64,000 bases of DNA from Heteronotia binoei (taxonomy: Eukaryota): assembly GCF_032191835.1 (NCBI RefSeq), contig NC_083236.1, positions 45,322,001-45,386,000 on the forward strand. Direction: 5' to 3'. The position numbers and the translations under genes are program-made. The stretch's first letter is position 1, and every line of letters starts with the position of its first letter. Of this stretch, positions 39,601-63,700 are shown piece by piece. The notes under the pieces are model-generated. The model made no database searches. It saw only the letters and a list, made by a program, of their open reading frames with translations, and was not told the DNA's origin.

Positions 39601-42600
39601 TTATTATATATGTGTGGCACGGATTAATGATGTTTTACATGAGAATTGCCTGTGTTTTTATGATTGCTTCATAAATGCTGCTGTGGGCTTCCTTCTCAAA
39701 GGCAAGGAAGAAGGGATATAATTTTTTAAAAAATACATGTATGTCAATCCTTTTCTGCTTCAGCCTCTGTTTGCACAGCTGCCCTCCCGTCAATGGCTGT
39801 CCAACCCCCAGATGATGCGTAACATATGTGAGGTGATCAACACCCACGTGAAAGGCTTCTGCCGGGCTCGCAGACCTTTCAGCAAGGTAAGATCTGGGGT
39901 GATAGTGCACAGGGGTGGAATTCTAGCAGAAGTTCCTTTGCATATTAGGCCACACACCCTGCTGATGTAGCCAATCCTCCAAGAGCTTTCAAGGCTCTTT
40001 TTTGTAAGCTCTTGGAAGATTGGTTACATCAGGGGTGTGTGGCCTAATATGCAAAGGAGCTCCTGCTAGAATTCCACCCCTGATAGCAGATGTAAGAATC
40101 CCTGCTGCGAACTGGCCAGCTTCTGGTCTTTGAGGATGGCTGCCTCTGCTGTGTGTTAATGCCAGCTGTATGTCCAAATCCATTGTGCATTTGTTGGACA
40201 TAGGATGCTACCTTGTACAACATCAGACTAGCACATTTAGCCCTTCACAATGCACTCAGACCAAAAGCAGTTCTCCAAGATTTCAGGAGAAAATCTTTCC
40301 CAAGCCCCAGCATCCTGCTAAATTGAGTTGCCGGAGGTCAAACCTGGACTCTTACACTTGCAGTCTGTAAATTATGGCCCAGATAAGTTGAACACATACA
40401 GCCAGGCCTCATTTTGGGTAGGAGCTCACAGGAGTGGAGCTCCGGAACCTCTACATTTTATTGTGCTCTAGGGTGACCATAATGTCTGAAGGCCAGCCAG
40501 GGACACTGGGGGGGGGGGGGTGCGGAAACAGGAAGTGACGTCACTTCCGGTGACGTCACTTCCGGTGATGTCATGCCACCACCGGAAACAGGAAGTGGCA
40601 TCACTTCCTGTGACATCATTTCCCCCGCGTCACCTGCCGGGAACAGGAAGTGACTTCACAGCACTTCCTGTGACGTCCCCAAAAATCCCCCAAATATCAC
40701 CGCCGGAAACAATTTTGTTCTCAAATCCTGTATATACTTCATCAGTATATGGGATAAGGCACTTTCTCAACTGTGCTGCATAATGCAGCCTATTTTGAGG
40801 GGTTATAGAGTGTTTCGAGCCCGTCCCTGTGGCATCGGTCCCATCGTTGTGGGACCAAGGGGGCCGGCGCAGCGGCACGCCGAAGCAGCCTGTCACTAAT
40901 AACACCGGTCAAGATGCAGGACAGGAACCTGGAAGTGACCGACAGGCTGCTGATAGGAACCCTCCAGGGACCTGATTAGGTCCCTGGGCCACATGTTTGA
41001 CACCTCTGTTCTAACCTGCTTATTTGCTGCATCATGTGCTTTCATTCTATGGCTATATCCGGAGGTGAAGAGCTGCAACTGAAAGATTACGTATATATTT
41101 TTAAAGTCAAAGGCTATGGGAGGGGAGCTGGGACAAGGAAAGTGTGAGGAAAACAGCAGTGTGGGTGATCTGTTGCCACTCCAAAATGCATTTGTAGAAG
41201 ACAGAAGGAACACAACACATCATTACTGTATGGATCCAGCCCCCTGGTATTATATAGTTAACCAGCAGGCTGTCCTTATTCTCAGATGTGTATGTGAAGG
41301 ACACACATATTTGTAGATTCATATGTTGTGTTTAGGGTTGCTAGGTCCCACCAGGCCACCGGTGGGTGATGAGGGGTAGGATTGCCAAATCAAGATTGGG
41401 AAACTCATGAAGATTTGGGGATGTGGTTTGGGAAGGAGAGGGACCTCAGTGGGGTGCAGTGCCATAGAGTCAACCCTCCAAGCTAGCCGTTTTCTCCAGG
41501 GGAACTGATATTTGTAGTCTGGAGATGAACTGTAAATCCTGTAGACCTGGAGGCTGGCATCCCTAGCTTGTGTTTTTAGGTATACATTTTATTAAAAAAA
41601 ACTTTGATGTGTACAAACCTGCAAAGTTGTGGCCTAAACCAGTTCCAGGAAGGAACTGGTTACCTCAAGGGTCCCCAACATGGCACCCGCCAACATCTTT
41701 CCTGGCACCCATCAAGGGTTTTTGGAAAGTGGGTGGGGCCAGCTGGGGCTTTTGCCCAGCAAGGCTTTTAATTGGCCACTGGAGATTTGATTGGCTGTGC
41801 AGATTTTTTTTTTCAACTGTGGTTTGGCAGCTACCACAGCACAAAGATCTTGACTGTTACTCAAGGTAAACCATGGCAGCCATTTTGTGACCACATCCTC
41901 TAAAGGTGGCCATGGGCTCAAAAAAGTTGGGGACCCCTGGATTACATCATATCTATATATTCATGAAGTGTATCTTTTACTGTGAAGACTGGCTTGGTTT
42001 CTGGCAGGACACAGACAGCACCTCTGCCCTGGCCTTAGTGCTTCTACCCCCGCCCCCCACCAGAAGTCATAAGAATATGACTGAGCCAAGTCTTTTCTTC
42101 CCTCAATGTCCAGTATCTCCTGTCAGATTCTGAACACTTGGTCATGAGCCAGTACGTGAAAGCCCTGCTGCAGAAGAAGATGGTGTGCCGGAACACAGAG
42201 GAGAGGAATCAGATGGGCCGGCAGATGTTGCAGGATGCCTCTCAGCTGAAGGAGCTCTTCTGCAGCCTGGTGAGAATTTTCCTGGAGAAGGGGATTGGCA
42301 AGTACTGGGAATCACTCAGGACAAGTGGGCTGACTTTGCTAACCAGGCCTACACAGAAGTACAAAGAGGAGGCCACAGTTTTGAAACCTCTTCCTCAGAA
42401 TCTTTGCTCCCAAGATTCTCTAAGCTTGTGGTGGGGAGGCCCATAGTCACTATGGGGGCTCTGTGAGGGCACTGCCCCGACTTCTGGGGGCCCCTATGGG
42501 ATGCAGCCTGCTTTTTCTCTGTGTGTGGGTTTTTTTGCCATGCCTGAGCTGGCGAAGTGTCATCAGCGGCAGCCAGAGCCAGGAGAGCTGTGTGAGGCAC

Positions 42601-45600
42601 AGTGCATTGCAACAGCAAAAGCAGCAGGCGGAGAGGAGGGAGGTGGAGGGGCAGGAGGCAGAGAAAGCTGAGTAGAATGAACCAGTGTGGGAGGGACAGA
42701 TGGAGCTGCTGGCTGCAAAGTGCTGGAGTGGGGGAGGGGGAGGTAGAAGAAAAGTCCCCTGCTTGCAAGCAAGGCGTAGTCCCTTCTTGACCCCAAAGTT
42801 TTAGGGTTGGCGGCCTCAACTTGGCCACTTTCAGAGCCTCCAGCTCTTGCCCCTACCCCAGAAAGCTTCTGAGAAGTGGCAAGCCCCACAGTGGATGGGA
42901 AAGGATGCCCCCCCAACTTTTTAAAAAGCCTCCCCATAACTTTTAAAACTCTGGCTATACCTGTGGGGGGGGGGATTACTGGGCTGGTTTTGCCCTCCAT
43001 CACACACACATCAGTCTCAGTCCCATAGCCCAATTGGAAATCAGACTGGGAAGGGTCCAAAGCAGATGAGTTGCCCCCAATGTCCTGAAGATGGTCCATC
43101 ACTGTTCTCTCTCACTCATCTTGCCCAGGAAGGGCAAATTAAGAGACTGGGTGGTAATTGGCCGCAACAGTTTTTGGTAGGCATGGTTTTTAAAGTAAAT
43201 CCGTTTAATGGAATGGAGTGGTAGGTCAGGGGCAAGATCCACCCATCTGACTCCCATGGTAACTGTTATGTTTTCCCAGGGCTTGGAGGAGAGCGATCAG
43301 TCCCTCAAAGTGATTGCTGATCTACAGGAGCTGATCAGCCTCAAGGATCCCACCATGCTTGAACTGGTAGTGCCGGGATTTGTGACAAAATACCCAGATG
43401 TCAGGTAGAGCACCTAAATCCCGAATGTTAGGGAGTTGTCTCTGGCACCATCTAGTGCCTGCCAAAGGAAATACAACTCTTGGGGTTGGTATTATCTTTT
43501 GTTGTTGTTTTTCAGTCGCACAGTCGAGTCCGACTCTTTGCAACCCCATGGACCAAGTCACGCCAGACCCTCCAGTCTTCCAACATCCTCTGAAGTCTGC
43601 TCAAATTCATGTTAGTTACATCAGTAATGCTGTCCAGCCATCTCTAGGCAGTATAATAAAAAGGAGAGACATCACCCTGCCAACAAAAGTCCGTATAGTC
43701 AAAGCGATGGTATTCCCAATAGTAAGGTATGGCTGTGAGAGTTGGACCATAAGGAAGGCCGAGCGCAGAAGAATAGATGCTTTTGAGTTGTGGTGCTGGA
43801 GAAGACTCTTGAGAGTCCCTTGGACTGCAAGAAGATCAAAGCAGCCAGTCCTAAGGGAAATCAATCCTGACTGTTCCCTGGAAAGTCAAATGCTGAAGCT
43901 GAAGCTCAAATTCTTTGGCCACCAAATGAGAAGGGATCACTCCCTGGAGAAGACCCTGCTGCTGGGAAAGACAGAAGGCAAAAGAAGAAGTGGATGGCAA
44001 AAGATGAGATGGCTGGACAGCGTTACTGATGTAACTAACCTCCATATGCAGGTGTTACCCTTCATGGCCAGCAGGGTTGCCAACCTTCAGGTGGAGCCTT
44101 GAGATTTCCCAGAATTATAAATTATTTCAAGGCTATAGGAGCCAGTTCCCCTAACAAAAACAGCTGCTTTGGTGGGTGTATTCTAAGGCGCCATAACCTG
44201 CTGAAGTCCCTCCCAAACCCCTAACCTCCCCAGGTTGCACCCTCAAATCTCCAAATATTTACTGACCAGAAATCAGCAATACTAAGCAGGAAGGGCTGTC
44301 TGGTATGACTCAGGGAATATCTGGGGACTTTGGGGGGTGGAGCCAGGAGCAAGGTAGTGACAAGCATGATTGAACTCCAAAGGGAGTTCTCACCATCACA
44401 TTTTAAAGGAACTGTGCTCCTTTTAATTTCCCTCCATTGGAAATTTGGTGCCCCTCCCTAAAAAAAACAGGGGCCCCCGAGCCCCAGATACCCACAGATC
44501 GATTCTCTATAGGGTATAACAGAGTGTCCCGATGGAGCCTTTCCCATACACAAGCAAGGCGAGGTGGTGAACTGGGGTGTGTGTCTGCCTGTTGTTGTTC
44601 CTCATCAGTTGTAGAGCCAGGTGCTGAGAATGCAGGTGGTGGCAGTGAATCAGTCAAGTGGTGAGAGGGGCCAGCTGTCGCCTCCGCTGGGCCTGTTAAC
44701 CCTGTAGGTTCTGCCTGGCCAGGCCCATCATCAGAGCCCATGATACGCCCATCCCTGTGCTCCGGCCTCCTACACTCCTTTTCAGGGAGCAGGAGCCTTA
44801 ACATTTAGTACATGTCTAATCCAGTTGGCTTCAATGTAATATAGTGGCAAAAGCGCTGGACTAGGACCAGAGAGACACGAGTTCAAATCCCCACTCAGCC
44901 GTCCAGTGGACATTCCACCCCCCGCTTTCTGATAACTGCGAATTGGGGGGGGGGGAGCCTCCAAACTAGGGGATTCCCTGCCTGCACCCTGCTGAGTGAT
45001 TGGCAACCCTAAAGTTACTGAAGTAAAACGGGAGTGTCCAAATTACTTGGTGCCTCAAGCGGGCACAGTTTGTCTGCCTTCCCTTTTTGCCCCTATTCTA
45101 TGGAAGAAATATAAACCTTCTTCAGAGTTAAGAGAAACTGTGGGGTGGCCATGGGTGGAACATCCATCTAAAAGCTCTCCTTGTAGCCACTATGGGGATG
45201 GATGCAGGGCAGTACTAAGCGCCATTTTCAAAATGGCTGCGCTACACTCCATATTCCCTAGGGTTGCCAGGTCTCCCCTGGATACCGGTAGGGGATGGGG
45301 GGGGGGGGGTTAGGGTTGCCAGATCCAGGTTGGGAAACACCTGGAGATTTGGGGATGAAACCTCAGGAGGACAGGGACCTTAGTGGGGCACAATGCTACA
45401 CATTCCACCCTCCCAAGCATTCATTTTGGACTGATTTCTATAGTCTGGAGATGAGCTGAAATTCCAGGGGATCTCATGGTCCCATCTGGAGGCTGGCATC
45501 TCTAGCATTCCCCCAACCCCTCCCAACCCTTTAAACAGGCTTTCCCCCCATTATTTTGCCAAGCCACACTGTAGCACTATGATGTGTCAAAGAAAGAGAA

Positions 45601-46940
45601 CAAAAAAGCCTTTTACAAAAGAAATGTATGGTGGCGGGGGGCGGGGGGGGGATGTAATATTTCCAGATTTTTTTCAGAAAAAAAAGTTGGGAAAATTTGA
45701 AATATATGCAATACTTACTGTCCCATCCAACCTGAACTAATTTTACTGTTTTAACAAAAATAGATCTTGGGCCAAACCCAGGAAAAGGTGGGAGTTGGCC
45801 AGTGGATTGGCCTCCACCAAATCTCACTTCCCCCCAAATGTAAATTGGAGCCAAGCAAGTTTGTTAAGCCCAACAAAGGCCTTTCAGTGTGACTGTTGCC
45901 ACATTGAAAATGGATGCAGCCTGCCAGGGTTAAGGATTAAACTTTCTTTTCCAACAGACACATACATATTTAAGTATTGATGTGTTCTGGATATCAAAAC
46001 CTTAGTAATGATACAGCCAAAAACTTTTGCAGATCACAATTACCTTTTACAATATCAAGTGTCCTTCAGCCCTCTAGGCCAGCCAGAAGGATGGACAATA
46101 TAGCCACCTTTGCTAGATCTCAGGTGAGAGATCTGTCCTCCCTGATGGATCCAGCAGCAAGAGAGCTTCTCTTCCTATTGCCAGAAACATTATCAAAGCT
46201 CTTTCCTCACCCCCTTGACCTAGATCTGCTCAGGTCAAAACAGCTTTTCCTGTCTCCAGAGATAGTCTTCCTATTTGATACCTCCACATATATGGTTCCT
46301 GTTTGGAGAAGGGAGAAGAGAAAATGGGGTGTTTATCTATCCATCTATCTATCCATTGTCTGCTCTGCTAGACACACGGGGCGGGGCGGGGCGGGGCAGG
46401 GGAGTTTTCCTGCCTCACAATGTCCCAGGAGAAAAATGCATTTTTTCACAGGATCCACTGCCCCATTCATGCCTTTGAAGATCATTCTCTCTCCTTGAAA
46501 ATCTAAAATGGATTGGAAAACATTTTCATACACTTAAAGGAGCTTTTCGCTATGCCTGCACTGGTTGCCCAGGGGAGGCCTAAGCCCCCGCCCCCCGAGC
46601 CCTGTACTGATAGCTTGGGGGGGAGGCTCAGACCCTCCTGGAAAAATCCAGTGGGGGCTTGTTTCCCTGAGGCCCCCTCCCCATAGTTTACACCTATGGT
46701 CAGCAGGAAGGCCAAGGAGGAGTGACATGCCTTCTGTCTTACTCTCCCTGCAGCGATGACCACATTTCCATGATCCTGGAAGTGCGTGGTGACGTCTCTA
46801 AAGAAATCCGCAACAACGTCCTGGAGATAATGGTGCAGAATCCACAGGCCCTGCCAGAAAACCACCAGCCTATCTTTAGTAACATTCTGGTTCCTGCTCC
46901 AGAGCTGCCCTACTGCCTCGGCAAGCCCAAGTGTGCCTGA
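24638..46940 (+). CDS. EXOC3L1: Exocyst complex component 3-like protein 1 (Sec6 family), 762 aa, 13 coding exons: join(24638..24680,27229..27389,29597..29816,33100..33775,35526..35643,36385..36510,36650..36750,38069..38179,38304..38445,39764..39886,42114..42269,43280..43404,46754..46940)
   Basis: Exons sum to 2289 nt, all GT-AG and phase-consistent. Motifs EWPEMEKAEKLARGTALKWASGIFYRPEQL, VQSYLEG, QCCPPHYN, MLDENIRVA and LPSRQWLS match EXOC3L1. Head-to-head position with E2F4 matches human 16q22.1 synteny. The first coding exon is less certain. Confidence 0.93.
26107..26365. repeat. 259-bp imperfect inverted repeat (hairpin), 8-nt loop
   Basis: Arm 26107-26231 pairs with 26240-26365; loop CTAAAAGC. 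Confidence 0.8.
27229..27389 (+). CDS. EXOC3L1: EXOC3L1 coding exon 2 (EEWPEMEKAE...SSIQSRIK)
   Basis: TCTCAG| acceptor, AAG|GTGGGT donor; 161 nt. Confidence 0.95.
29597..29816 (+). CDS. EXOC3L1: EXOC3L1 coding exon 3 (STVQSYLEGM...LPRLFS)
   Basis: CTCTAG| acceptor, G|GTGAGG donor; 220 nt. Confidence 0.95.
29965..30266 (-). mobile_element. Sauria SINE (partial copy also at about 22905-22990, +)
   Basis: Minus strand AAGGTAGTCCCCTGTGCAAGCACCAGTCGTTTCTGACTCTGGGGTGA...GTGGTTTGCCATTTCCTTCCCCAGTC, typical of the Sauria SINE. Confidence 0.8.
30305..30500. mobile_element. Two inverted Penelope terminal-repeat fragments with hammerhead cores, forming a hairpin of about 150 bp
   Basis: Arms about 30305-30380 and 30383-30456 are reverse complements; both contain the PLE motif (C)TGAAGAAGTGTGCATGCACA..GAAAGCTTATA..TTGGTCTTAAAG.TGCCA. 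Confidence 0.8.
32157..32656. mobile_element. About 500-bp MITE with TAGGGTTGCC termini; copies at about 33788-34220 and 52830-53338; a shorter related family at about 22494-22690, 25690-26050, 37535-37715, 41335-41565, 45270-45505, 51579-51815, 58131-58325, 59230-59365
   Basis: Terminal inverted repeats TAGGGTTGCC/GGCAACCCTA and many dispersed similar copies in the window. Confidence 0.75.
33100..33775 (+). CDS. EXOC3L1: EXOC3L1 coding exon 4 (VHELLSES...WVLHVYP)
   Basis: ACGCAG| acceptor, AG|GTCAGT donor; 676 nt. Confidence 0.95.
34495..34800 (+). repeat. Tandem array, 81-bp unit x about 4, each unit with ATGCAAAT; related arrays at about 16605-16865 (-, 3 units) and 60040-60295 (+, 3 units)
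   Basis: ATGCAAAT at 34510, 34591, 34672 and 34753, an exact 81-bp period. The unit shares GGCCTAATATGCAAA with the palindromic MITE. Confidence 0.85.
35526..35643 (+). CDS. EXOC3L1: EXOC3L1 coding exon 5 (AEMMAHPSLLPEVD...VIKVQ)
   Basis: CCGCAG| acceptor, CAG|GTAAGA donor; 118 nt. Confidence 0.95.
36385..36510 (+). CDS. EXOC3L1: EXOC3L1 coding exon 6 (ASISEWMQKTLE...PIIAMK)
   Basis: CTCCAG| acceptor, AAG|GTGAGA donor; 126 nt. Confidence 0.95.
36650..36750 (+). CDS. EXOC3L1: EXOC3L1 coding exon 7 (MLDENIRVAALIS...ETFLG)
   Basis: TATCAG| acceptor, AG|GTCAGT donor; 101 nt. Confidence 0.95.
37721..37808. repeat. (CCTT)n microsatellite, part of a Charlie-like MITE fragment
   Basis: About 21 uninterrupted tetramer units. 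Confidence 0.9.
38069..38179 (+). CDS. EXOC3L1: EXOC3L1 coding exon 8 (LTEALVEFD...NNCLAL)
   Basis: CTGCAG| acceptor, AG|GTACTC donor; 111 nt. Confidence 0.93.
   Translation, partial: PDRGPGGIRQRTPTRASLLQAPCLLPAVRHQQLLGS
38304..38445 (+). CDS. EXOC3L1: EXOC3L1 coding exon 9 (ASVSTLC...MLEDLQ)
   Basis: GGGCAG| acceptor, weak donor CAG|GTTTTA; 142 nt. Confidence 0.88.
38920..39085. mobile_element. Penelope terminal-repeat fragments (inverted pair) with hammerhead core
   Basis: Minus strand CTGAAGAAGTGACCTCTGTCTCATGAAAGCTC at about 38976-39008; plus-strand degenerate partner GTGAGTTCTTCTGTCTCACAAAAGCTCATAATGAAATAAA. Confidence 0.65.
39764..39886 (+). CDS. EXOC3L1: EXOC3L1 coding exon 10 (PLFAQLPSRQWLS...RPFSK)
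   Basis: CTTCAG| acceptor, AAG|GTAAGA donor; 123 nt. Confidence 0.95.
40469..40960 (+). mobile_element. DNA-transposon fragment starting TAGGGTGACCA (hAT-Blackjack-like end) with subterminal GGAAGTGACGTCAC repeats
   Basis: TIR-like start at 40469; CpG-rich repeated motifs at 40520-40680. The matching right end was not found. Confidence 0.55.
42114..42269 (+). CDS. EXOC3L1: EXOC3L1 coding exon 11 (YLLSDSEHLVMSQYVKALLQKKMVCR...LFCSL)
   Basis: GTCCAG| acceptor, CTG|GTGAGA donor; 156 nt. Confidence 0.95.
43280..43404 (+). CDS. EXOC3L1: EXOC3L1 coding exon 12 (GLEESD...TKYPDV)
   Basis: TCCCAG| acceptor, AG|GTAGAG donor; 125 nt. Confidence 0.95.
43497..44039. mobile_element. Bov-B (RTE) LINE fragment with internal inversion
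   Basis: 43645-44039 (+) encodes DITLPTKVRIVKAMVFPIVRYGCESWTIRKAERRRIDAFELWCWRRLLRVPWTARRS, the Bov-B ORF C-terminus. 43497-43644 is the element 3' end with (AAC)n tail on the minus strand. Confidence 0.9.
46754..46940 (+). CDS. EXOC3L1: EXOC3L1 last coding exon (DDHISMILEVRGD...CLGKPKCA*)
   Basis: CTGCAG| acceptor; TGA ends at 46940. Confidence 0.95.
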
Positions 46941-48376: not shown

Positions 48377-48591
48377 NNNNNNNNNNNNNNNNNNNNNNNN
48401 NNNNNNNNNNNNNNNNNNNNNNNNNNNNNNNNNNNNNNNNNNNNNNNNNNNNNNNNNNNNNNNNNNNNNNNNNNNNNNNNNNNNNNNNNNNNNNNNNNNN
48501 NNNNNNNNNNNNNNNNNNNNNNNNNNNNNNNNNNNNNNNNNNNNNNNNNNNNNNNNNNNNNNNNNNNNNNNNNNNNNNNNNNNNNNNNNNN
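48377..48591. other. Assembly gap (215 N)
   Basis: Run of N. Confidence 1.
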
Positions 48592-52700: not shown

Positions 52701-54081
52701 CGCTCTATGTAGTTCCGAGTATGACCAGGGTCAGCTCTAGACTGTCTGGCACCCTAGACAAGACTAATTTCTGCCCCCACCCCCGCTGCACTGATAACTG
52801 TCACCAAGTAACATGGGGAGGGTGGGTGCTAGGGTTGCCAAGTCCAATTCAAAAAATATCTGGGGACTTTGAGGGTGGAGCCAGGAGACATTGGGGTGGA
52901 GCCAGGAGCAAGGTTGTGACAAGCATTAATGAACTCCAAAGGGAGGTCTGGCCATCACATTTAAAGGGACCATGCACCTTTTTAAATGCCTTCTTTCCAT
53001 AGGAAATAATAAAAGATAGGGGCACCTTTTTGGGGGGCTCATAGAATTGGACCCCTTGGTCCAATTTTTTTGAAACTTGGGTGGTATTTTGGGGAAAGAC
53101 ACTAGGCACTATGCTGAAAATTTGGTGCCTCTATCTCAAAAAACAGCTCTCCCCAGAGCCCCAGATACCCTCATATCAAGTCTCCAATATTTCCTATGGG
53201 AATAAGACTCCATAGTGAATAATAGAGTTCCCAACAGACATTTCCCTCCCCTCCCCCCGCTTTCTGATGACCCTGAAGCAGGGGGAGGGCCTCCAAACCG
53301 GGTGATCCCCTGCCTCAACCTGGGGATTGGCAACCCTAGGGGTGCCCAATTTAGCGCATCCAGAAGACTGGCGCTCTAAGCAATCACCTAGTTTGCCTAA
53401 TGGCAGGGCCAGCCCTGAGTCTGACATAAACAATGTTTCTTCTCTTTCTGCAGAAATCCAGCCTGTTAACATTATAGCTTTAAAAGTTCATCAAGAGAAC
53501 ACAAAGCAGAAGAAATACATTCATTGTTGAACGATTCTAGTAATATGTATATATATTATATTTGTTCTAACAAATACTTTAGTTAGATCTGGTACATTTA
53601 TTATTAATTTACACAATAAAGATCTATTTTGCATCCTTTAGTTTGCTTGATTCGGTTTAATTTATTGGATTTCTAGCCCACCCTTCTCGCAAGCGGGCTC
53701 AGAGCGGATTACAGCATAACCATAAAACAATGAAAATTACATTTGATGTGTTAAAAACTATTACAAAATAAAACCACTACTCTTCAGTAAAACGATGGTG
53801 TCCAGAAACGAATCATTTTATATTCCAAGTGATCCACTGAGGCATAAATAATCCCAGTGAAATCTGGAACAGTCTCTTGGAACCCGGCCCAACAAGTGTG
53901 CCCCTGGAACACCTCCCCCCCACCCCCAAAAAATGCATTACCGTGTGGATGCTCAGTTGGAATTGTGAATACCTTTGCATTCACAGCAGCAACAGAAGAA
54001 ACACAGAAAGTCATCATTGTGTGGTTGTAATGATAGACAGAAAAGGGTTCTGCACACTGGAAGACTGCTATTCAATTAAAG

Positions 54082-54550
54082 CAGGGGTCATTTTGTAGAA
54101 AAATAGGTAGCGGAGCTCATTAGCATAACTCATTAAGTTATGCTGCACACCCTCCCCCCAGCCAAAAGCAACCCGATACAAGAAAGGAGAGCCCCAGGCG
54201 AACAAGGCCTGCTTGGGCTGGCTAAAGATCCAGCCAGCCCAAGCAGGCCTCTCTCACCCGGGGCTCTCCTTGCCCGCCCCCACATCAAAAGGCCAGTAAG
54301 CCACCCGCTGCCCATAATCACATAAGAAGTGGAGAAAGGGTGGCACGGACTTCTCCAGAGGTTAATGAAGGCTGCTGGGGGTGTGGCAAAGCTCCTGGTG
54401 GCTGGCTGGCTGCCCGCTCTCCTAATCCAGGGATTGTTATGAAGCTGCACCTACTATTCAATGGACGAGGTAGGTGGGAAGGAGGAGGTGGAACCCTCAG
54501 AAAGGTTTAGGAGCTGCGCTCCTGTGAGCTCCTGCTGAATCTGAGGCCTG
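54082..54550. mobile_element. Non-autonomous hAT-like element (469 bp) in the copy A 3' flank
   Basis: Ends CAGGGGTC...GAGGCCTG; 8-bp flanking repeats AATTAAAG/AATTAAAA (7/8 match); absent from copy B. Related fragments lie at about 31440-31620 and 40400-40468. Confidence 0.7.
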
Positions 54551-54648
54551 AATTAAAAGCAGACTGAAGCTGTTCTGTTTTCAGAAAAAACTTCCCTGAT
54601 TTCCACCAGCCAGAAGCAACACCCCATCCTCATATTTCTTCCAGCAAC

Positions 54649-55668
54649 TTAATTTGATAACTTCTCCATTGAAACACCACTCTCTATTGTAGATTTCTCC
54701 CTGGCAGATTTTTCTTCTGAGTCTTCATGAATTTTGGCAAACAACTTGGCAAAATTGCTCTCCCGTAGCCCTCCATGGAAACTCCGTGCAGCGAAAGCGT
54801 ACAAGATTGGGTTCAGGCAGCTGCTTACAAAGGCGATAGCCCCGTGAATGTTCATTGTTGCTTTGGTCACCTGGAGCAAGTTCTCTGCCGTCTCCGGGTG
54901 TCCCTCTTTCAGCAGCAATGCAACGTTGATGAGAATATTGAAGACTTGGTAAGGGAGCCAACACACAAAGAAAGCAATGACCACCGCTGCAATCAGCTTC
55001 CCTGTCTTCATTTTCTTGTGGTTCTTCAGTATCTTTAGCCTCTTCAGGACGCAGGTGTAGCAGACAGCCATCACAGTGAAAGGGATCACAAAGCCAACCA
55101 AGGTCTCCACAAAGTTCACCGTCACTCGCGTCCGATCGGTATAGTACATTTCGTCCGCGCACACGCCTTCCTTCTTGGGCTTGGAGGACGCAATTAGAAT
55201 TGGGCTTCCGAAGATGCAAGCGGCCACCCAGAGCAGCAGCAATGTACAGCGCACCACACGCGGCCGCCCAAACTTTTGGGAGTGAAATGGATAGGTCACA
55301 GCGGCAAAACGATGGAGGCTCATCAGCGTGATGAGGAAGATGCTGGCATAAACGGTCAGGTAGACACAGAACTTGAGCAGCCTGCAGAAAATGTCTCCGA
55401 AGACCCAGCCGTAGAGGAAAGAGTAAATCCAGAAGGGTACGGTGCTCATGACAATCAAGTCTGTGATGGCCAAGTTCAGAATGAGGAGAAGGGTCAAAGA
55501 GTGTCGGGAGAACTTGGTAACAATAATCCAGACCACAAAGCCATTCCCAGGGAAACCAACCAAGAAGCAAGCAAAGAGAAACAGGCTTGGAAGCACAGAG
55601 ATAGACTCATGAGTTTCCCCTGTCCCTGTATTGTTCCCTTCCAGCTCTGAGGCATTGTAGAGGTCCAT
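54649..55668 (-). CDS. Leukotriene B4 receptor (BLT1/BLT2)-like class A GPCR, copy A, 339 aa from MDLYNASE
   Basis: Uninterrupted ORF with 7 hydrophobic segments and family motifs GFPGN (TM1), LNLAITD (TM2), YASIFLITLMSLHRF (TM3), VETLVGFVIPF (TM5), CWLPY (TM6), FVSSCLNPILY (TM7), FAKLF (helix 8), plus N-terminal N-glycosylation sites NAS and NNT. Closest recalled family is BLT. The start Met is inferred; the ORF is open further upstream to 55863. Confidence 0.88.
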   Translation of the reverse strand: MDLYNASELEGNNTGTGETHESISVLPSLFLFACFLVGFPGNGFVVWIIVTKFSRHSLTLLLILNLAITDLIVMSTVPFWIYSFLYGWVFGDIFCRLLKFCVYLTVYASIFLITLMSLHRFAAVTYPFHSQKFGRPRVVRCTLLLLWVAACIFGSPILIASSKPKKEGVCADEMYYTDRTRVTVNFVETLVGFVIPFTVMAVCYTCVLKRLKILKNHKKMKTGKLIAAVVIAFFVCWLPYQVFNILINVALLLKEGHPETAENLLQVTKATMNIHGAIAFVSSCLNPILYAFAARSFHGGLRESNFAKLFAKIHEDSEEKSAREKSTIESGVSMEKLSN

Positions 55669-55888
55669 GTGGCTTCTCGTGCAGGACTCAGCTTTTGCAA
55701 GTAACCAACTGGCCAACGGCATAAATAAGAGCTTCAGAACCAAGAGGAAATGACTCGGGGAGGGGGCGTGGCATAGTTCATAGATGGATAGATTGGTTCT
55801 GCTTCGGAAACATTTTGTAAGAACCTTAAATTCCTCTTTTTGTGGTGTTTGCTTCTGATGCAATCTAAAAGGCTTCCTAAGGAGATGC

Positions 55889-56704
55889 TGTGATGGAAAG
55901 CAATGGGTTAACCATAAACTGAAGACGCACAGGGCTGCGTCAGGTGACCTGAGGGTGGGGGCAAAGTGCTCGGAGCTCTCAGGGAGGGAAAGGGGTAGTG
56001 GAGAAAGAGAAACTGCTGAGGCAGTCAGTCAAGTTGATGTCTGACAGAGTGGAGGCCTGTCAGAGAAGTCTGTCAGTGGGGACCTGACAGAGACTGAGAG
56101 GGTCAGTTTGAGCCTGCCAGAGAGGCTGAGGGGACAGCTGATCCTGTGAAGGAGCTTGAGGCGGAGACGGGGAAGTCTTCCAGAGACTGCAAGCTCGACA
56201 AAACCAGCCAAGAGGGCTGTGTGTGTGTGAGTCAGTTAAGACCTGAACGGTCACAAACACCTAGAGACAACTCTGAAGATCTAGTGAGGTGGTTGAGGGA
56301 GTGGATGTGGGTCTGAGACACCAGAAGGGCTGAGAGGAGAGACTCCAGTCGAGGGGTGAGACTTGACACATCAATCCCAAGAGGCCAGACCTTGGCTAGA
56401 GGTGGAGAGTGAGTTAAAGGGAAACTGTGAACTGTGTAACTGTGAGAGACTCAAGAAAAGATAAAGTGAATGTAAAGCCTGAAATAACTGAACAACGTAT
56501 TAGCCTGTGTAAATATCTCCCATATCCCCAAGTTAAGAACTTTGTGTTACAATAAATCTGTGGTTTAAGTTAAAGTGCTCAAGAGCCTATATTTTGTGGG
56601 AAGAACAAACAAAGCTGCTGTGGTCCCATCAAATAAACAAGTAAAATACCCCGAAGAGACTGAAATAAAGAGATCCAGTGAGGCCATGAGGTTGTCGCTG
56701 CTAT
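55889..56704 (+). mobile_element. 816-bp segment present only in copy A; solo-LTR-like insertion flanked by AGATGC direct repeats
   Basis: Copy B has a single AGATGC at this site, copy A has AGATGC-[816 bp]-AGATGC. Starts TGTGATGG and has AATAAA motifs near its 3' end, but ends GCTAT rather than CA. Classification is tentative. Confidence 0.6.
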
Positions 56705-58328
56705 AGATGCCTTCTGCTGATCTTAACATTTCTGTGTCCCAGGTGGGGAATCACCTCTGCTGCAACCAACATCCCTTCTGCACCTGTTACTTGAATATTT
56801 AAGTGTCGGGATCATGCTTCCATGCCACTGCCACAATGTGATAGCATTTGTTTGTGTGTATATATGTCAAATTACAGCCAACCTATGTTGACCAGTTAGG
56901 TTTTCACAGCAAGGGGTGAATGGAGGTCTGCCAATGCCTACCTCTGTGTAGCACCCCTGGACCTCCTTGGTACTGTCCAGGACTGATCCTGCTTAGGCTA
57001 GCCTGAGCCATCCAGCATTTAGCTTCTGTTAAATGTATCAGCTGGGCTACGCAACCCTTACACACAATAATTTTGAAGTAAAAGAGAGCTATCATGCACT
57101 CTTCCCTGAATCAGATTACCCTATGCCTGTGTGAGAGTGAAATTCTCTGTTATGCACCCCTTTCTGCCTTTTGCCTTCCTTTACACTGGAGGAAAGTACT
57201 TCTCCTAATGGACCAGATCTGCAAGATCTAATCCCACAGCAATGGGATTTCCCGTATGAGTTCTTCCCACAGCATTTCCCATACGAGTTCTTCCTTTTCA
57301 ACTTCTGAACAGCAACCATCACCATAGAAAGATGTTAGTAGAAATCAGGCATATACTGAAGCAGGGCTTTTTTTCTGGAAATAGATGTGCCGGACCTCTC
57401 GGGGGAAATGAAGGAGAAACACATGGGCGCCCCTCATGAACTTTAACATATCTTTTGATAATTTTGTTTCCATGCCTTTGTCTGGATCATTGGATGTTTG
57501 AATCTACATATTACACACACCAACGCATTACACACTTGTCAAAGGACCTTAAGGCCAAGGTCCTATTAAGGGACACAGGCTGGGCAAATGCAAGGAATGC
57601 AAAGTATTTAAAAAAGATGCTTTTGTGACCCGCTACATCCATCCATCAAAATGCTGGTAGATATCAGGATTGAGACCAGTTTTCCCTCTAAGTTGAATTA
57701 GTCTGAGCCAGGGCTATTTTGTAGAAAAAGCCCAGCAGGAATTTATTTGCATATTTAGACCACACAGGGCTTTTTTTGTAGCAACCCCTTTGCATATTAG
57801 GACACACACCCCGGATGTAGCCAGTCCTCCTTGAGCTTACAGTAGGCCCTGTACTATGATTCCTGTAAGCTTTTGGAGGATTGGCTACATCAGGAGGTGT
57901 GGCTTAATATGCAAAGGAGTTCCTGCAAAAAAAAGCCCTGAGGCCATACCTCTGGCGCCAAGCCAGCTGGAACTCTGTTCCTGTGCATTCCTGCTCAAAA
58001 AAAGCCCTGGTGTGAGCTCGCAGTTTTTTAGCTTCTGGCTCATGCATTTTTGTCTGTACAGCAACACAGGATGGCTGCTTGTGATCATGAAATAGTGTTG
58101 GGGTTGGAGTGCTGTAATGAGGATTTAGGATAGGTTGCCAGCCTGGGTTGGGAAATCCCTAGAGATTTTGGGGGTGGGGCCTGGAGAGGATAGGGCTTGG
58201 GGGAAGGAGGAACCTCAGCGTGGTACAATGCCATGGAGTCTACTCTCCAAACCAGCCATTTTCTCCAGGGGAACTGATTTCTGTCCTCTGGAGATCAGTT
58301 GTAAAAGTGGGAGATCTCCAGGTCCTAC

Positions 58329-58590
58329 CAGTTTGGTGTAGTGTTTATGTGAGTGGACTCTTATCTGGGAGAATTGGGTTTGATTCCCCACTCCTCCACT
58401 TGCACCTGCTGGAATGGCCTTGGGTCAGCCATAGATCTGGCAGAGGTTATCCTTGAAAGGGCAGCTGCTGTGAGAGCCCTCTCAGCCCCACCCACCTCAC
58501 AGGGTGTCTGTTGGTGGGGGGAGAGATAAAGGAGATTGTGACCGCTCCAAGACTCTGAAATTCAGAGTATAGGGCAGGATATAAATCTTC
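58329..58590 (+). mobile_element. Squam3-like SINE
   Basis: CCAGTTTGGTGTAGTG head; body near-identical to the 23198 copy. Confidence 0.75.
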
Positions 58591-58671
58591 TTCTACCTGG
58601 AGGCTGGCAGCCCGACATTCCCGAAGAACTGATCCCAGCTGCTTGTGAAGGAACACAATGGGCTTATTAAG

Positions 58672-58885
58672 AACATAAGAACATAAGAGAAGCCATGTTG
58701 GATCAGGCCAACGGCCCATCAAGTCCAACCCTCTGTGTCACACAGTGGCAAAAAATGTTATATACACACATACACTGTGGCTAATAGCCACTGATGGACC
58801 TGTGCTCCATATTTTTATCTAAACCCCTCTTGAAGGTGGCTATACTTGTGGCCGCCACCACCTCCTGTGGCAGTGAATTCCATTT
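58672..58885 (-). mobile_element. CR1 LINE 3' fragment
   Basis: Same CR1 terminal sequence as at 23824. Confidence 0.8.
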
Positions 58886-59504
58886 AATTTACATCACGAT
58901 ACATACAACTTGGGCCTCCATGCTATGACTGCTACAACTCTAGCAGCCATTTTGACAAGAAGCTCCAACTTCCTCCTCCCTGATCCCACCAGGAAGCTGA
59001 CAGCTGCTCCTCCAAACATCTCCTCTTTCTTAACTGTGTCATTCTTTGTAACTCTCTCACAATGGAAGCAGAGCCCCCCTTCCTGTGGTATGTATTTATT
59101 TAGAAACTTGTATGCCCTCTCAGACCCGCTGAAGGAAGCTCACAACAATAAAATAAAACCAAGCATACAATACCAATAAAAACATATCATACCAATTAAA
59201 ACATAGCAGGGAAGCAATTCATAGGGTGTTGCCTGCTCGAAGTTGGGAAAATCCTGGAGGTTTGGGGGTAGAGTCTGAGGAGGGTGGGGTTCAAGCAGGG
59301 GAGGGACTTCAGTGGGGTACAATGCCGTAGAGTCCACCCTCCAAAGCAGTCATTTTCTCCAGAGAGAGAAAGACCTCTGCAAACACAGGCTTAGATGCTG
59401 TGTAGTGAGGAAAGTCTAACTTTCCTAGTCCCAGTCTCTGTTCCCAGAGCATCTAATCTTCCCAAATGCCATGAAGCAGAGTCCTTGTCAAGAATGGCTC
59501 TGAG

Positions 59505-59720
59505 CAGTGTTCCCTCTAAGCTAAGTTAGCATGAGCTAGCTCACAGATTTTTAACCTCCAGCTCACACATTTTTGTGTTAGCTCAGGAAGGACGACCCCA
59601 GAACACACTCATTTATGCAGTAGCTCACAACTTTAATACCAATAGCTCACAACTTTAATGCTAATAGCTCACAAAGCAGACGTTTTGCTCACAAGACTTT
59701 GCAGCTTAGAGGGAACATTG
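59505..59720. mobile_element. MITE with CAGTGTTCCCTCTAAG...CTTAGAGGGAACATTG termini; further copies at about 20350-20790, 26803-27000, 35309-35499
   Basis: Terminal inverted repeats and shared internal AGCTCACA repeats across four or more copies. Confidence 0.8.
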
Positions 59721-60704
59721 ATTCTGAGGCAGAATACTTTACACCTTAACTATTTATTTAGGTGCTCAGAGCTCAGATATAGCAGGGTCTTCTTTATACA
59801 CCAACTATTCTAGAAACTACAAGATTTTGTGTTTGAAGTAATGAGTGTAGTAGGTTGATGTTGGAAGAGTCTCTGATCTAAAACACATTTGTTCATTTTA
59901 GATAATTTGTGTTAACTATTATGCCTCCCCCACCGCCCAATACATGCTAAGTATGTTACTACCTTGATCTCAGCCAAAGGAACTCAGAGCAGCATATACT
60001 ATTCTACCCTCATCCATTGTGTACTATACCCAAAGCCTTTTTTGAGCAGGAACACAGTTCCAGCTGCCTTGGCATCAGGAGGTGTGGCTTAATATGCAAA
60101 TGAGTTCCTGCTGGGGTTTTTTCCTACAAAAAAGCCCTGTGTGAAACAATAGTGATGTCAGGGGATGTGGCCTAATATGCAAGTGAGTTTCTGCTGGGCC
60201 TTTTCTACAAAAAAGCCCTGTGTGAAACAATGGTGAAGTTGGGGTGTGTGGCCTAATATGCAAATAATTTCCTGCTGGGCTTTTTCTACAAAAAAACAAG
60301 CAAACCGATGACCATACCCCCTGAAGAAGATTCATCTGAAATGGAGCAACTGCCCCAAGATTACCCAGCAAGCTTTGTGGCAAAATTGAGCATCTGAAGC
60401 AGGCCCTCCTAAACCATAGTCCCAACACCTTAAGCACTGGGTGTGTAATACAGCACCATGTCACAGCTGACTTATAGCAACTCATAGGGTTTTTTTTAAG
60501 GCAAGATAAATTCAGAGGTGCCTTGCTGTTGCCTGCCTCTGCATAGCAACCCTGGACTCCCTTGGGTGTCTCCCATCCAAGTACTCACCAGGGCTAACCC
60601 TGCTTAGCTTCTGAGATCTGACAAGAATGGGTGAGCCTGGCCCATCCAGATCTATGCTGTGCTGCTACATCACTGTTAAGCCCACACTCCTTATGCAGTC
60701 CCAA

Positions 60705-63700
60705 GTTTGACATAAACAATATATTTGTTCTCTTCCTGCAGAAGTCCAGCCTATTAACACTATAGCTTTGAACGTTCATCAAGAGGACACAAAGCAGAAG
60801 AAATGTATTCATTGTTGAACAATCCTAGTAATATCTATATACGCTGCATTTGTTCTAATTAATATTTTAGTTAGCTCCGGCATATTGATTATTAATTTAC
60901 ACAATAAAGATCTATTTTACATCGTTTTCTTTTGAAGAGTCTTTTGGCTCTTGGCTTCACATCTTCTCGAGGTTTGTCCCTATGAAACATACCCCTCCCC
61001 CAAACTGAGGACTCTACATTCCCATTACTATGTCGATGCTCCATTGCAACTGTGAATGCCTCCACATTCACAGCAGCAGTAGAAGAAACACAGAAAATCA
61101 TCATTGTGAGGTTGCAGTGACAAACAAAAAGGGGTTCTCCAGACCGGAAAACTGCGATTCAGTTAAAAATATGGTTACCAGACAGATTGAAGCTGTTCAG
61201 AACGAAGCTCCCCTGTTTGCCACCTGCCAGAAACATTGCCCCAACCTCATGCCTATTCCAGCAACTTCTGAAGTCCTCCACAGGGGCACCTGTGTGTATA
61301 TATTTATATATGCCTTGCGTTTATTCTTATAGCTTCTCCATTGAAAGACCACTGCCCCCTGTAGATTTCTCCCCGGCAGATTGTTCTTCTGAGTCTTCAT
61401 GAATTTTGGCAAACAACTTGGCAAAATTGCTCTCCCGTAGCCCTCCACGGAAACTCCGTGCAGCGAAAGCGTACAAGATTGGGTTCAGGCAGCTGCTTAC
61501 AAAGGCGATAACCCCGTGAATGTTCACTGCCACTTTGGTCACCCGGAGCAAGTTCTCTGCCGTCTCCGGGTGTCCCTCTTTCAGCAGCAGAGCGATGTTG
61601 ATGAGGATGTTGAAGACGTGATAAGGGAGCCAACACACAAAGAAAGCAATGACCACCGCTGCAATCAGTTTCCCCGTCTTCATTTTCTTGTGGTTCTTCA
61701 GCATCTGTAGCCTCTTCAGGACGCAGGCGTAGCAGACAGCCATCACAGTGAAAGGGATCACAAAGCCAACCAAGGTCTCCACAAAGTTCACCGTCACTCG
61801 CGTCTGATCGGTATAGTACATTTCGTCTGTGCACACGCCTTCCTTCTTGGGCTTGGAGGACGCAATCAGAATTGGGCTTCCGAAGAGGCAAGCGGCCACC
61901 CAGAGCAGCAGCAATGCACAGCGCACCACACGCCGCCGCCCAAACTTTTGGAAGTGAAATGGGAAGATCACGGCAGCAAAACGATGGAGGCTCATCAGCG
62001 TGATGAGGAAGATGCTGGCATAAATGGTCAGGTAGACAAAGAACTTGAGCAGCCTGCAGAAAATGTCTCCGAAGACCCAGCCGTAGAGGAAAGAGTAAAT
62101 CCAGAAGGGTACGGTGCTCATGACCATCAAGTCTGTGATGGCCAAGTTCAGAATGAGGAGAAGGGTCAAAGAGCGTCGGGAGAACTTGGTAACAATAGTC
62201 CAGGCCACAAAGCCATTCCCAGGGAAACCAACCAAGAAAAAAGTAAAGAGAAATAGGCTTGGAAGCACAGAGATAGACTCATGAGTTTCCCCTGTCGCTG
62301 TATTGTTCCCTTCCAGCTCTGAGGCATTGTAGAGGGCCATGTGGCTTCTCATGCAGGGCTCAGCTTTTGCAAGTAAACAACTGGCCAAAGGCATAAATAA
62401 GAGCTTCAGAACCAAGAGGAAATGACTCGGGGAGGGGGCGTGGCATTGTTCATGGATGGATAGATTGGTTCTGTTGCAGAAACATTTCTTAAGAACATTA
62501 AATTCCTCTTTTTGTGGTGTTTGCTTCTGATGCAATCTAAAAGGCTTCCTAAGAAGATGCCTTCTGCTGATCTTAACATTTCTGTGTCCCAAATGGGGAA
62601 TCACCTGTGCTGCAACCAACATCCCTTCTGCACCTGTTACTTGAATATTTAAGTGTGGGGATCATGCTTCCATGCCACTGCCACAATGTGATAGCATTTG
62701 TGTGTGTGTATATATGTCTAAAGTGCTGTCAAATTACAGCCAGCCTATGTTGACCAGTTAGGTTTTCACAGCAAGGGGTGAATGGAGGTCTGCCAATGCC
62801 TACCTCTGTGTAGCACCCCTGGACCTCCTTGGTACTGTCCAGGACTGATCCTGCTTAGGCTAGCCTGAGCCATCCAGCATTTAGCTTCTGTTAAATGTAT
62901 CAGCTGGGCTACGCAACCCTTACACACAATAATTTTGAAGTAAAAGAGAGCTATCATGCACTCCTCCCTGAATCAGATTACCCTATGCCTGTGTGAGAGT
63001 GAAATTCTCTGTTATGCACCCCTTTCTGCCTTTTGCCTTCCTTTACACTGGAGGAAAGTACTTCTCCTAATGGATCAGATCTGCAAGATCTAATCCCACA
63101 GCAATGGGATTTCCCGTATGAGTTCTTCCCACAGCATTTCCCATACGAGTTCTTCCTTTTCAACTTCTGAACAGCAACCATCACCATAGAAAGATGTTAG
63201 TAGAAATCAGGCATATACTGGAGCACAGCTTTTTTTCTGGAAATAGATGTGCCGGACCTCTCGGGGGAAATGAAGGAGAAACACATGGGTGCCCCTCATG
63301 AACTTTAACATATTTTTGATAATTTTGTTTCCATGCCTTTGTCTGGATCATCGGATGTTTGAATCTACATATTACACAAACCAACACATTACACACTTGT
63401 CAAAGGACCTTAAGGCCAAGGTCCTATTAAGGGACACAGGCTGGGCAAATGCAAGCAATGCAAAGTATTTCAAAAAGATGCTTTTGTGACCCGCTACATC
63501 CATCCATCAAAATGCTGGTAGCTATCAGGATTGACACCAGTTTTCCCTCTAAGCTGAATTAGTCTGAGCCAGGGCTCTTTTTGTAGAAAAAGCCCAGCAG
63601 GAACTTATTTGCATATTTAGACCACACAGGGGTTTTTTTGCAGCAACTCCTTTGCATATTAGGACACACACCCCGGATGTAGCTAGTTTTACTTGAGCTT

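What the first reader, a model, noticed from the sequence alone, without database searches (positions are those of the whole stretch)
54649..62340. BLT-like receptor pair next to EXOC3L1/E2F4: candidate third BLT lineage (ohnolog) absent from mammals
Seen: two intact BLT-family GPCRs about 8 and 14 kb downstream of the EXOC3L1 stop codon. Known: human LTB4R/LTB4R2 lie at 14q12 beside CIDEB/ADCY4/RIPK3/NFATC4, while E2F4-EXOC3L1 lies at 16q22.1 followed by MATCAP1 (KIAA0895L); I recall no BLT gene there. Known: 14q11-12 and 16q are one whole-genome-duplication paralogon (NFATC4/NFATC3, CARMIL3/CARMIL2, TPPP2/TPPP3, ARHGEF40/PLEKHG4, ZFHX2/ZFHX3, ADCY4/ADCY7). Inference: these genes are neither BLT1 nor BLT2 orthologs but a retained ohnolog lost in mammals and expanded in this lizard, i.e. 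an uncharacterised reptile lipid-chemoattractant receptor system.
Basis: partly seen in the sequence, partly recalled or inferred. Interest (0 to 1): 0.82.

Follow-up and report, generated by a model that had tools for sequence, protein, structure and literature searches.

The report
Third, non-placental branch of BLT receptors
Two intact tandem receptor genes in a gecko (a third copy lies just outside the window) belong to an old, unstudied sister branch of the leukotriene B4 receptors BLT1 and BLT2. This branch survives in sharks, fishes, amphibians, reptiles, monotremes and marsupials, but no placental mammal, bird or crocodilian member was found.

Summary
Two intact single-exon class A GPCR genes lie on the minus strand at 54649-55668 and 61327-62340. 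They sit 7.7 and 14.4 kb beyond the end of a Sec6-family gene (EXOC3L1), which is head-to-head with E2F4. The genome is Heteronotia binoei. A third copy lies 9 kb right of the window.

ML trees place these genes outside BLT1 and BLT2. They fall in a well-supported sister clade (99/94) that holds chondrichthyan, ray-finned and lobe-finned members. An AU test rejects grouping them with BLT1 (p 4e-18). The gecko's true BLT1 lies on another chromosome beside an adenylate cyclase, as in human 14q12.

Clade members in python, platypus, tarpon and goby also sit beside genes whose human orthologues are on 16q (EXOC3L1, PSMB10, BCAR1, AMFR). An origin by whole-genome duplication is therefore plausible but not proven.

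"Absent from mammals" is wrong. Platypus and echidna carry orthologues, and marsupials carry a sister-lineage gene. No placental, bird or crocodilian member appeared.

The receptors keep part of the BLT1 lipid pocket. They lack the polar triad H3.29/R4.64/R7.35 needed for LTB4 activation, so the ligand is open. Expression was not shown.

The parts
54649..55668 (-). BLT-like receptor gene 1: single-exon CDS, 339 aa (P0001)
   Evidence: Intact ORF. Pfam 7tm_1 E 3e-54. Best solved relative is BLT1 7vkt_A, E 7e-47. Placed in clade B2a in the ML trees.
61327..62340 (-). BLT-like receptor gene 2: single-exon CDS, 337 aa
   Evidence: Intact ORF. Pfam 7tm_1 E 2e-53. 90% identical to gene 1. dS 0.077 and omega 0.63 against gene 1.
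32907..46940 (+). EXOC3L1 (Sec6-family gene, 742-aa product), from its large Sec6 exon to the stop codon. It is convergent with gene 1.
   Evidence: Called gene with PF06046 Sec6. ORF 32907-33878 matches Sec6, E 1e-35. The last three exons match the python Sec6 gene by tblastx at 42110-42291, 43272-43438 and 46739-46950.
16040..16150 (-). E2F4 DNA-binding-domain exon. It is divergent from EXOC3L1.
   Evidence: Motif search. PDB 1CF7_A, transcription factor E2F-4, E 1.9e-19; E2F8 scores only 6e-8.

Best explanation
The two genes, plus a third copy 9 kb to the right, are young tandem duplicates of a squamate gene. That gene belongs to an ancient BLT-related receptor lineage, here called clade B. 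Clade B is the sister group of BLT1+BLT2 and arose before cartilaginous and bony vertebrates split. It resides in the chromosome block that corresponds to human 16q, whereas BLT1/BLT2 reside in the 14q12 block. This fits the two lineages being duplicates from the early vertebrate genome duplications. The gecko's sub-lineage (B2a) is shared by lungfish, caecilians, salamanders, monotremes and squamates. Sister sub-lineages occur in sharks, ray-finned fishes, frogs, turtles and marsupials. No placental, bird or crocodilian member was found.

Inferred, not shown: the proteins work as rhodopsin-type chemoattractant-style receptors, probably Gi-coupled, for a hydrophobic and probably acidic lipid ligand. 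The ligand would bind in a BLT-like pocket. That pocket keeps E5.42, Y3.37, G5.46, W6.48, Y6.51 and F7.43 but has lost the polar residues BLT1 uses for LTB4. The ligand may therefore not be LTB4.
For: Trees. In careful ML trees of 107, 117 and 52 rows, the BLT superfamily has support 100/99. Clade A (BLT1+BLT2, including H. binoei BLT1 P0350) has 100/99-100. Clade B has 99/94, B2a 99/94 and B2b 99/94. The AU test rejects B2a+BLT1 as one clade (delta lnL 127.7, p 4e-18).

Paralogy within genomes. H. binoei, Paroedura, Eublepharis, Sphaerodactylus, Python, Thamnophis, Rhineura, Elgaria, Ambystoma, Pleurodeles, Microcaecilia and Bombina each carry a canonical BLT1 as well as a clade-B gene.

Synteny of clade B. 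Gecko: E2F4-EXOC3L1-BLTL x3. Python: EXOC3L1-BLTL-chymotrypsin-family gene. Platypus: PSMB10 ends 9 kb upstream. Tarpon B1 gene: next to BCAR1. Goby Z gene: between an AMFR-architecture gene and an ESRP-family gene.

Synteny of BLT1. Gecko BLT1 is on CM063339.1 beside a 1084-aa adenylate cyclase.

Constraint. Omega is 0.26 for gecko against python and 0.13 for python against platypus. ORFs are intact in more than 25 squamates.

Pocket. The residue table is, the mapping to human BLT1, and the BLT1 residue roles come from PMC8894450.
Against: The whole-genome-duplication origin rests on human map positions and paralogue pairs (ADCY4/ADCY7, EFS/BCAR1, NFATC4/NFATC3) that I recalled and did not test. 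An old segmental duplication followed by translocation is not excluded. No cyclostome member was found that could date the split.

Within clade B, the separation of B2a from the bony-vertebrate Z group is only borderline (AU p 0.045).

Function is wholly inferred. Omega among the three gecko copies is 0.60-0.76. Four RNA runs gave essentially no reads over the gene 1 CDS, so some copies may be decaying or expressed only in unsampled cells. D3.49 of the DRY motif is His in these proteins.
Confidence: 0.75

Rival explanations
1. Clades A and B separated by an ancient tandem or segmental duplication followed by translocation, not by whole-genome duplication. The 16q-type surroundings would then be secondary.
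For: Tandem duplication is rampant in this family: BLT2-BLT1 tandems appear as fused gene models, elephant shark has at least 5 tandem copies, and the gecko has 3. No paralogue pair flanking both loci was tested with data here.
Against: Clade-B loci in five species all have 16q-type neighbours. BLT1 has a 14q12-type neighbour in the gecko. Both clades hold cartilaginous and bony vertebrates, which puts the split at or before the time usually assigned to the genome duplications.
Confidence: 0.25
2. The genes are simply fast-evolving BLT1 (or BLT2) orthologues, or a recent retro- or transposed copy of BLT1 specific to this lizard.
For: NCBI names them 'leukotriene B4 receptor 1-like'. BLT1 is the best PDB match.
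Against: The same genome has a canonical BLT1 (P0350). It is 55% identical to alligator BLT1 but only 35-37% identical to these genes, and it lies on another chromosome beside an ADCY gene. The AU test rejects the grouping. Python shares the EXOC3L1 position and platypus has its orthologue beside PSMB10.
Confidence: 0.02
3. The family is real, but the gecko copies are redundant and partly decaying, so the local 'expansion' has no functional meaning.
For: Omega among the copies is 0.60-0.76 at dS 0.05-0.08. The 46 variable sites are spread evenly over helices and loops. There is almost no RNA coverage of the gene 1 CDS in four runs.
Against: All three ORFs are intact and keep every class A motif. 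Long-term omega is 0.13-0.26. The tissues of the RNA runs are unknown, and leukocyte receptors are easily missed. One 210-nt RNA contig covers the 3' end of the CDS.
Confidence: 0.3
4. The receptors belong functionally with the peptide or protein chemoattractant receptors (C3a, C5a, chemerin, formyl peptide), as some automatic names suggest.
For: Clade-B members carry NCBI names such as 'C3a anaphylatoxin chemotactic receptor-like', 'chemerin-like receptor 2' and 'C5a receptor 1-like'. Foldseek scores for C5aR, GPR1 and APJ are almost as good as for BLT1. The LTB4 polar triad is absent.
Against: The trees place them with BLT1/2 at 100/99 and apart from the chemerin, C3a and CMKLR1 representatives. 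E5.42, G5.46, Y3.37 and F7.43 of the BLT lipid tunnel are retained.
Confidence: 0.2

Closest known systems
BLT1 (LTB4R), the high-affinity leukotriene B4 receptor
   Same: Class A 7TM fold. It is the best solved relative (7vkt_A: E 7e-47 and 34% identity; Foldseek rank 1, target-normalised TM-score (TMt) 0.84). It shares E5.42, G5.46, Y3.37, W6.48, Y6.51, F7.43 and N7.36, that is 8 of 16 LTB4-pocket positions.
   Different: It is a separate clade on a different chromosome with different neighbours. H3.29 becomes K, R4.64 becomes S and R7.35 becomes M; in BLT1, Ala mutants at these three positions nearly abolish signalling (PMC8894450). F2.60 becomes W, L2.64 becomes F, I7.39 becomes G, and DRY becomes HRF.
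BLT2 (LTB4R2), the low-affinity LTB4 / 12-HHT receptor
   Same: Same superfamily. Teleost BLT2 also often has His at 3.49 (7 of 11), so HRF is not a sign of decay.
   Different: BLT2 groups with BLT1 in clade A (100/99). It keeps R4.64 and R7.35. It is only 30-32% identical to the gecko proteins.
Unnamed vertebrate 'LTB4R1-like' genes: zebrafish-type si:dkey-148a17.5/.6, shark and teleost genes labelled 'leukotriene B4 receptor 1', and monotreme 'C3a receptor-like' genes
   Same: These are the true relatives. They fall in the same clade B (99/94), share the W2.60/G7.39/non-Arg-7.35 signature, and have 16q-type neighbours.
   Different: The gecko genes sit in the lobe-finned-only sub-clade B2a. 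Squamates have additionally lost R4.64, and geckos have Lys at 3.29. No paper on any member was found.

Membership tests
BLT1/BLT2 (leukotriene B4 receptors) | Class A GPCR with intact core motifs (N1.50, D2.50, R3.50, W4.50, P5.50, CWxP, NPxxY) | tested here: met
   Pfam 7tm_1 matches over the full profile. All these positions are present. Only D3.49 differs; it is His.
BLT1/BLT2 (leukotriene B4 receptors) | Falls inside the BLT1 or BLT2 orthologue group in a phylogeny | tested here: not met
   It is sister to BLT1+BLT2: clade A 100/99, clade B 99/94. AU p 4e-18 against grouping with BLT1.
BLT1/BLT2 (leukotriene B4 receptors) | Genomic position in the ADCY4-LTB4R-LTB4R2-CIDEB block | tested here: not met
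   The window genes lie beside EXOC3L1/E2F4. The gecko's real BLT1 lies on another chromosome beside an adenylate cyclase.
BLT1/BLT2 (leukotriene B4 receptors) | Polar residues required for LTB4 activation of BLT1: H3.29, R4.64, R7.35 | tested here: not met
   The gecko has K99, S161 and M272. R4.64 and R7.35 are near-invariant in clade A. Residue roles are from PMC8894450.
BLT1/BLT2 (leukotriene B4 receptors) | Hydrophobic lipid tunnel and E5.42/G5.46 | tested here: inconclusive
   8 of 16 pocket positions are identical. E5.42, G5.46, Y3.37, W6.48, Y6.51 and F7.43 are kept. Positions 2.60, 2.63, 2.64, 3.36 and 7.39 are changed.
BLT1/BLT2 (leukotriene B4 receptors) | Binds and signals to LTB4 or 12-HHT | not testable with these tools
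   This needs receptor expression and ligand assays.
Clade B, 'BLT-like' receptors (unnamed) | Monophyly with shark, fish, amphibian, monotreme and marsupial 'LTB4R1-like' genes, to the exclusion of BLT1/2 | tested here: met
   Support 99/94 in two trees and 98/90 in the reduced tree.
Clade B, 'BLT-like' receptors (unnamed) | Residue signature W2.60, G7.39, no Arg at 7.35, no His at 3.29 | tested here: met
   The gecko has W80, G276, M272 and K99.
Clade B, 'BLT-like' receptors (unnamed) | Neighbours whose human orthologues are on 16q | tested here: met
   E2F4 and EXOC3L1 (gecko, python), PSMB10 (platypus), BCAR1 (tarpon), AMFR-type gene (goby). The human map positions are from memory.
C3a/C5a/chemerin/formyl-peptide receptors | Groups with these receptors in a phylogeny | tested here: not met
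   Representatives named C3aR-like, CMKLR1 and chemerin-like receptor 2 fall outside the BLT superfamily branch (100/99).

The most novel reading that the evidence does not exclude
Clade B is a true duplicate of the BLT1/BLT2 locus from the early vertebrate genome duplications. It has been kept for more than 400 million years in most jawed vertebrates and encodes receptors for a lipid mediator other than LTB4. This would be an unrecognised vertebrate lipid-chemoattractant signalling axis that placental mammals (and apparently birds and crocodilians) lost, and so one invisible to mouse and human pharmacology.
Probability: 0.3. Interest if true: 0.7.

Novelty: new variant of a known kind. Interest (0 to 1): 0.5.

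Why it matters
BLT1 and BLT2 are treated as the complete LTB4-receptor family because human and mouse have only these two. This locus shows a third, older sister lineage with its own conserved pocket signature. Databases scatter it under misleading names: 'LTB4R1', 'LTB4R1-like', 'C3aR-like', 'chemerin-like receptor 2' and si:dkey-148a17.x. Recognising the lineage has three uses. It corrects orthology calls in fish and shark immunology, where the gene labelled 'ltb4r' may be the wrong one. It gives a defined set of orphan receptors to deorphanise, with zebrafish-type, frog and gecko genes available. It also offers a clean case of mosaic and reciprocal loss: B2a against Z in amphibians, reptiles and mammals.

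Tried and rejected
1. AU test on the 117-row set. It did not finish in three runs, and the first run also carried a wrongly included outgroup row. It was replaced by a 52-row set.

2. Synteny for turtle (Caretta) and Tasmanian devil genes. No called neighbours lay within 10 kb. tblastx of their flanks against the other loci gave nothing beyond a shared LINE between platypus and elephant shark.

3. The Salminus neighbour is only a KCTD-type BTB protein of 829 aa. KCTD19 is a guess and was not used as evidence.

4. The goby ESRP-family neighbour could not be assigned to ESRP1 or ESRP2.

5. P0135 looked like a possible extra mammalian member. It is not on record by exact look-up, and a homology search showed it is a second platypus copy (P0447, 85% identical, same chromosome).

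6. Expression. Four RNA runs laid on 53700-59699 showed depth almost only on interspersed repeats. The gene 1 CDS was essentially uncovered, apart from one 210-nt contig at 54523-54732 in X1. This is neither proof of transcription nor of silence.

7. Foldseek against the PDB ranks BLT1 first but barely above APJ, C5aR and GPR1, so structure does not discriminate.

8. Literature searches for BLT3, ltb4r3, LTB4R-like, si:dkey-148a17 and LTB4R with ohnolog terms found nothing relevant.

9. No BLT2-like ORF lies in the 21-kb locus around gecko BLT1, 10 kb on each side.

10. The scan's earlier notes held nothing on this locus.
Full report
**What is there.** The window is Heteronotia binoei chromosome record CM063338.1, positions 45322001-45386000. 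Two intact ORFs lie on the minus strand. Gene 1 runs 54649-55668 (339 aa from the ATG at 55668). Gene 2 runs 61327-62340 (337 aa from the ATG at 62340). Both match Pfam 7tm_1 end to end (E 3e-54 and 2e-53). They are 90% identical.

A third copy (P0002, 337 aa) lies 9,062 bp further right, outside the window. The three copies form one clade in the trees (100/99). They differ by dS 0.05-0.08, and the duplicated DNA extends beyond the coding sequence (96.9% identity over 3.5 kb for copies 2 and 3). They are therefore young, lineage-specific tandem duplicates.

**Surroundings.** A Sec6-family gene with a 742-aa product lies on the plus strand. Its large exon is at 32907-33878 (Sec6 E 1e-35). Its last exon ends at about 46940. 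That is 7.7 kb from gene 1 and 14.4 kb from gene 2, and convergent with them.

An exon at 16040-16150 (-) matches the E2F-4 DNA-binding domain (PDB 1CF7_A, E 1.9e-19). E2F4 and the Sec6 gene are head-to-head, the arrangement I recall for human E2F4/EXOC3L1.

**Family placement.** By sequence the nearest solved structure is human BLT1 (E 7e-47; the next is CCR8 at 3.5e-38). I combined 120 named homologues, 150 representatives from an exhaustive HMMER search and names from cluster look-ups. From these I built careful ML trees (LG+C20+F+G4 PMSF) of 107, 117 and 52 rows.

All three trees show a BLT superfamily (100/99) that is separate from the chemerin, C3a and CMKLR1-type representatives and from the chemokine-receptor representatives. 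The superfamily splits into two clades.

- Clade A (100/99-100) holds canonical BLT1 from vole, alligator, emu, turtle, squamates, frogs, salamander, caecilian, coelacanth, sturgeon and teleosts. It also holds BLT2: the vole BLT2 half of a fused gene model, plus teleost 2a/2b, Amia and bichir sequences.
- Clade B (99/94) holds the gecko genes.

Clade B has three parts.
- B1 is ray-finned only (100/99-100).
- B2a (99/94) has a branching order that mirrors the species tree: lungfish, then caecilians and salamanders, then monotremes and squamates.
- B2b (99/94) has two cartilaginous-fish groups plus group Z (frogs, turtle, marsupials, gar and teleosts).

An AU test rejects uniting B2a with BLT1 (delta lnL 127.7, p 4e-18).

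**Paralogy is direct.** H. binoei has a canonical BLT1 (P0350). It is 55% identical to alligator BLT1 but only 35-37% identical to the window genes. It lies on a different chromosome (CM063339.1) next to a 1084-aa adenylate cyclase. This matches what I recall of the human ADCY4-LTB4R arrangement. Many other species also carry both a BLT1 and a clade-B gene.

**Synteny.** Python has the orthologue between EXOC3L1 and a chymotrypsin-family gene. Platypus has it 9 kb downstream of PSMB10. The PSMB10 C-terminal exon scores E 5e-8 against PSMB10 and 9e-4 against PSMB7.

A tarpon B1 gene lies beside BCAR1 (E 3e-72 to BCAR1 structures). A goby Z gene lies between a gene with the AMFR domain set (RING, CUE, G2BR) and an ESRP-family gene.

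From my knowledge of the human map, E2F4, EXOC3L1, PSMB10, BCAR1 and AMFR are all on 16q. The 16q-type location is therefore old and shared, not a recent transposition. Together with the 14q12-type position of BLT1, and with both clades containing cartilaginous and bony vertebrates, this fits an origin by whole-genome duplication. I did not test the flanking paralogue pairs with data. An old segmental duplication remains possible; I give it about 25%.

The lineage is not absent from mammals. Platypus has two B2a copies (P0308 and P0447, on the same chromosome) and echidna has one. Marsupials have a Z-group gene.

No placental sequence appeared among the 120 best homologues or the named representatives. 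If placentals had this gene, their many sequenced genomes would have flooded those lists. No bird or crocodilian member appeared either.

B2a and Z are distributed in a complementary way: salamanders and caecilians against frogs, squamates against turtle, monotremes against marsupials. Each sub-clade follows the species tree, which suggests two old paralogues lost reciprocally. However, the AU test against a single B2a+Z clade is only borderline (p 0.045).

**Likely function.** I mapped the gecko protein onto human BLT1, using the residue roles reported for the LTB4-BLT1-Gi structure (PMC8894450).

- Kept: E5.42, G5.46, Y3.37, W6.48, Y6.51, N7.36 and F7.43.
- Changed: F2.60 to W, F2.63 to S, L2.64 to F, M3.36 to V, H6.52 to Q and I7.39 to G.
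- Polar triad replaced: H3.29, R4.64 and R7.35 become K, S and M. Alanine mutants at these positions nearly abolish BLT1 signalling.

Across clades, R4.64 and R7.35 are near-invariant in BLT1/BLT2. Clade B has no conserved Arg at 7.35 (only 3 of 10 non-squamate B2a members have one). Clade B has W2.60 and G7.39 as its own signature. E5.42 is shared by both clades.

DRY is HRF in all 13 squamates sampled, but His at 3.49 is also common in teleost BLT2, so this is not a sign of decay.

I infer a chemoattractant-style receptor, probably Gi-coupled, for a hydrophobic and probably acidic ligand that need not be LTB4. This is inference only.

An AlphaFold model (pLDDT 78.6) is a normal 7TM bundle. 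Foldseek ranks BLT1 first, but not decisively.

**Constraint and expression.** Long-term omega is 0.26 (gecko against python) and 0.13 (python against platypus), although dS is saturated. Among the three gecko copies omega is 0.60-0.76, and their 46 variable sites are spread evenly. That indicates either relaxation or diversification after duplication.

Four RNA runs gave essentially no coverage of the gene 1 CDS. Expression is therefore unproven.

**Novelty.** The genes are annotated only by automatic names. Searches of the paper library for a third BLT receptor, or for the zebrafish-type locus names, found nothing. I rate this a new variant of a known kind: a distinct, ancient and uncharacterised BLT-related subfamily. 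Interest is moderate.

Noticed in passing
L001:2569-6084 (minus strand of the locus), about 4-7 kb beyond the third receptor copy and right of the window: An uninterrupted 1171-aa ORF carries protease, reverse transcriptase, RNase H, integrase and chromodomain. It is the pol of a Ty3/gypsy-type (chromovirus-like) LTR retrotransposon. No host gene such as MATCAP1 was called in the 10 kb right of copy 3.
   Followed up: partly
window 58300-58900 (also 57700-58100 and 56300-56700): Interspersed repeats between genes 1 and 2 collect very high depth in all four RNA runs (summed contig depth up to about 2e5), with many loose ends and back-joints. They look like abundant transcribed repeat families, not part of the receptor transcripts.
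   Followed up: no
window 48377-48591: A run of 215 N lies between EXOC3L1 and gene 1.
   Followed up: no
P0266 (Myodes glareolus, 683 aa) and P0286 (Larimichthys crocea, 719 aa): These public gene models fuse BLT2 (N-terminal half) to BLT1 (C-terminal half). They are useful as evidence that the BLT2-BLT1 tandem is conserved from teleosts to mammals, but they are annotation errors.
   Followed up: yes
Public names of clade-B proteins: One clade carries at least seven different automatic names: LTB4R1, LTB4R1-like, C3aR-like, C5aR1-like, chemerin-like receptor 2, AT1R-like and FPR-related. Many teleost and shark clade-B genes are labelled 'leukotriene B4 receptor 1' although the true BLT1 is a different gene in the same species. 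Zebrafish-derived names are si:dkey-148a17.5/.6.
   Followed up: partly
L011 (H. binoei CM063339.1:35132268-35153371): The gecko BLT1 locus shows no BLT2-like ORF anywhere in this 21-kb locus (10 kb on each side of BLT1). In mammals, as I recall, BLT2 directly abuts BLT1 on its upstream side. Squamates may lack BLT2, or it may lie further away.
   Followed up: partly
L004 (Callorhinchus milii MU249845.1:11637173-11658159): Elephant shark has at least five tandem clade-B receptor genes within 21 kb, so the lineage is locally expanded there too.
   Followed up: no
P0212 (lamprey 'chemerin-like receptor 2'): This was the only cyclostome sequences near the family. It falls outside the BLT superfamily, with the chemerin/C3a-type group, on weak support (93/54). 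No cyclostome BLT-type gene was seen among the best 150 representatives.
   Followed up: no
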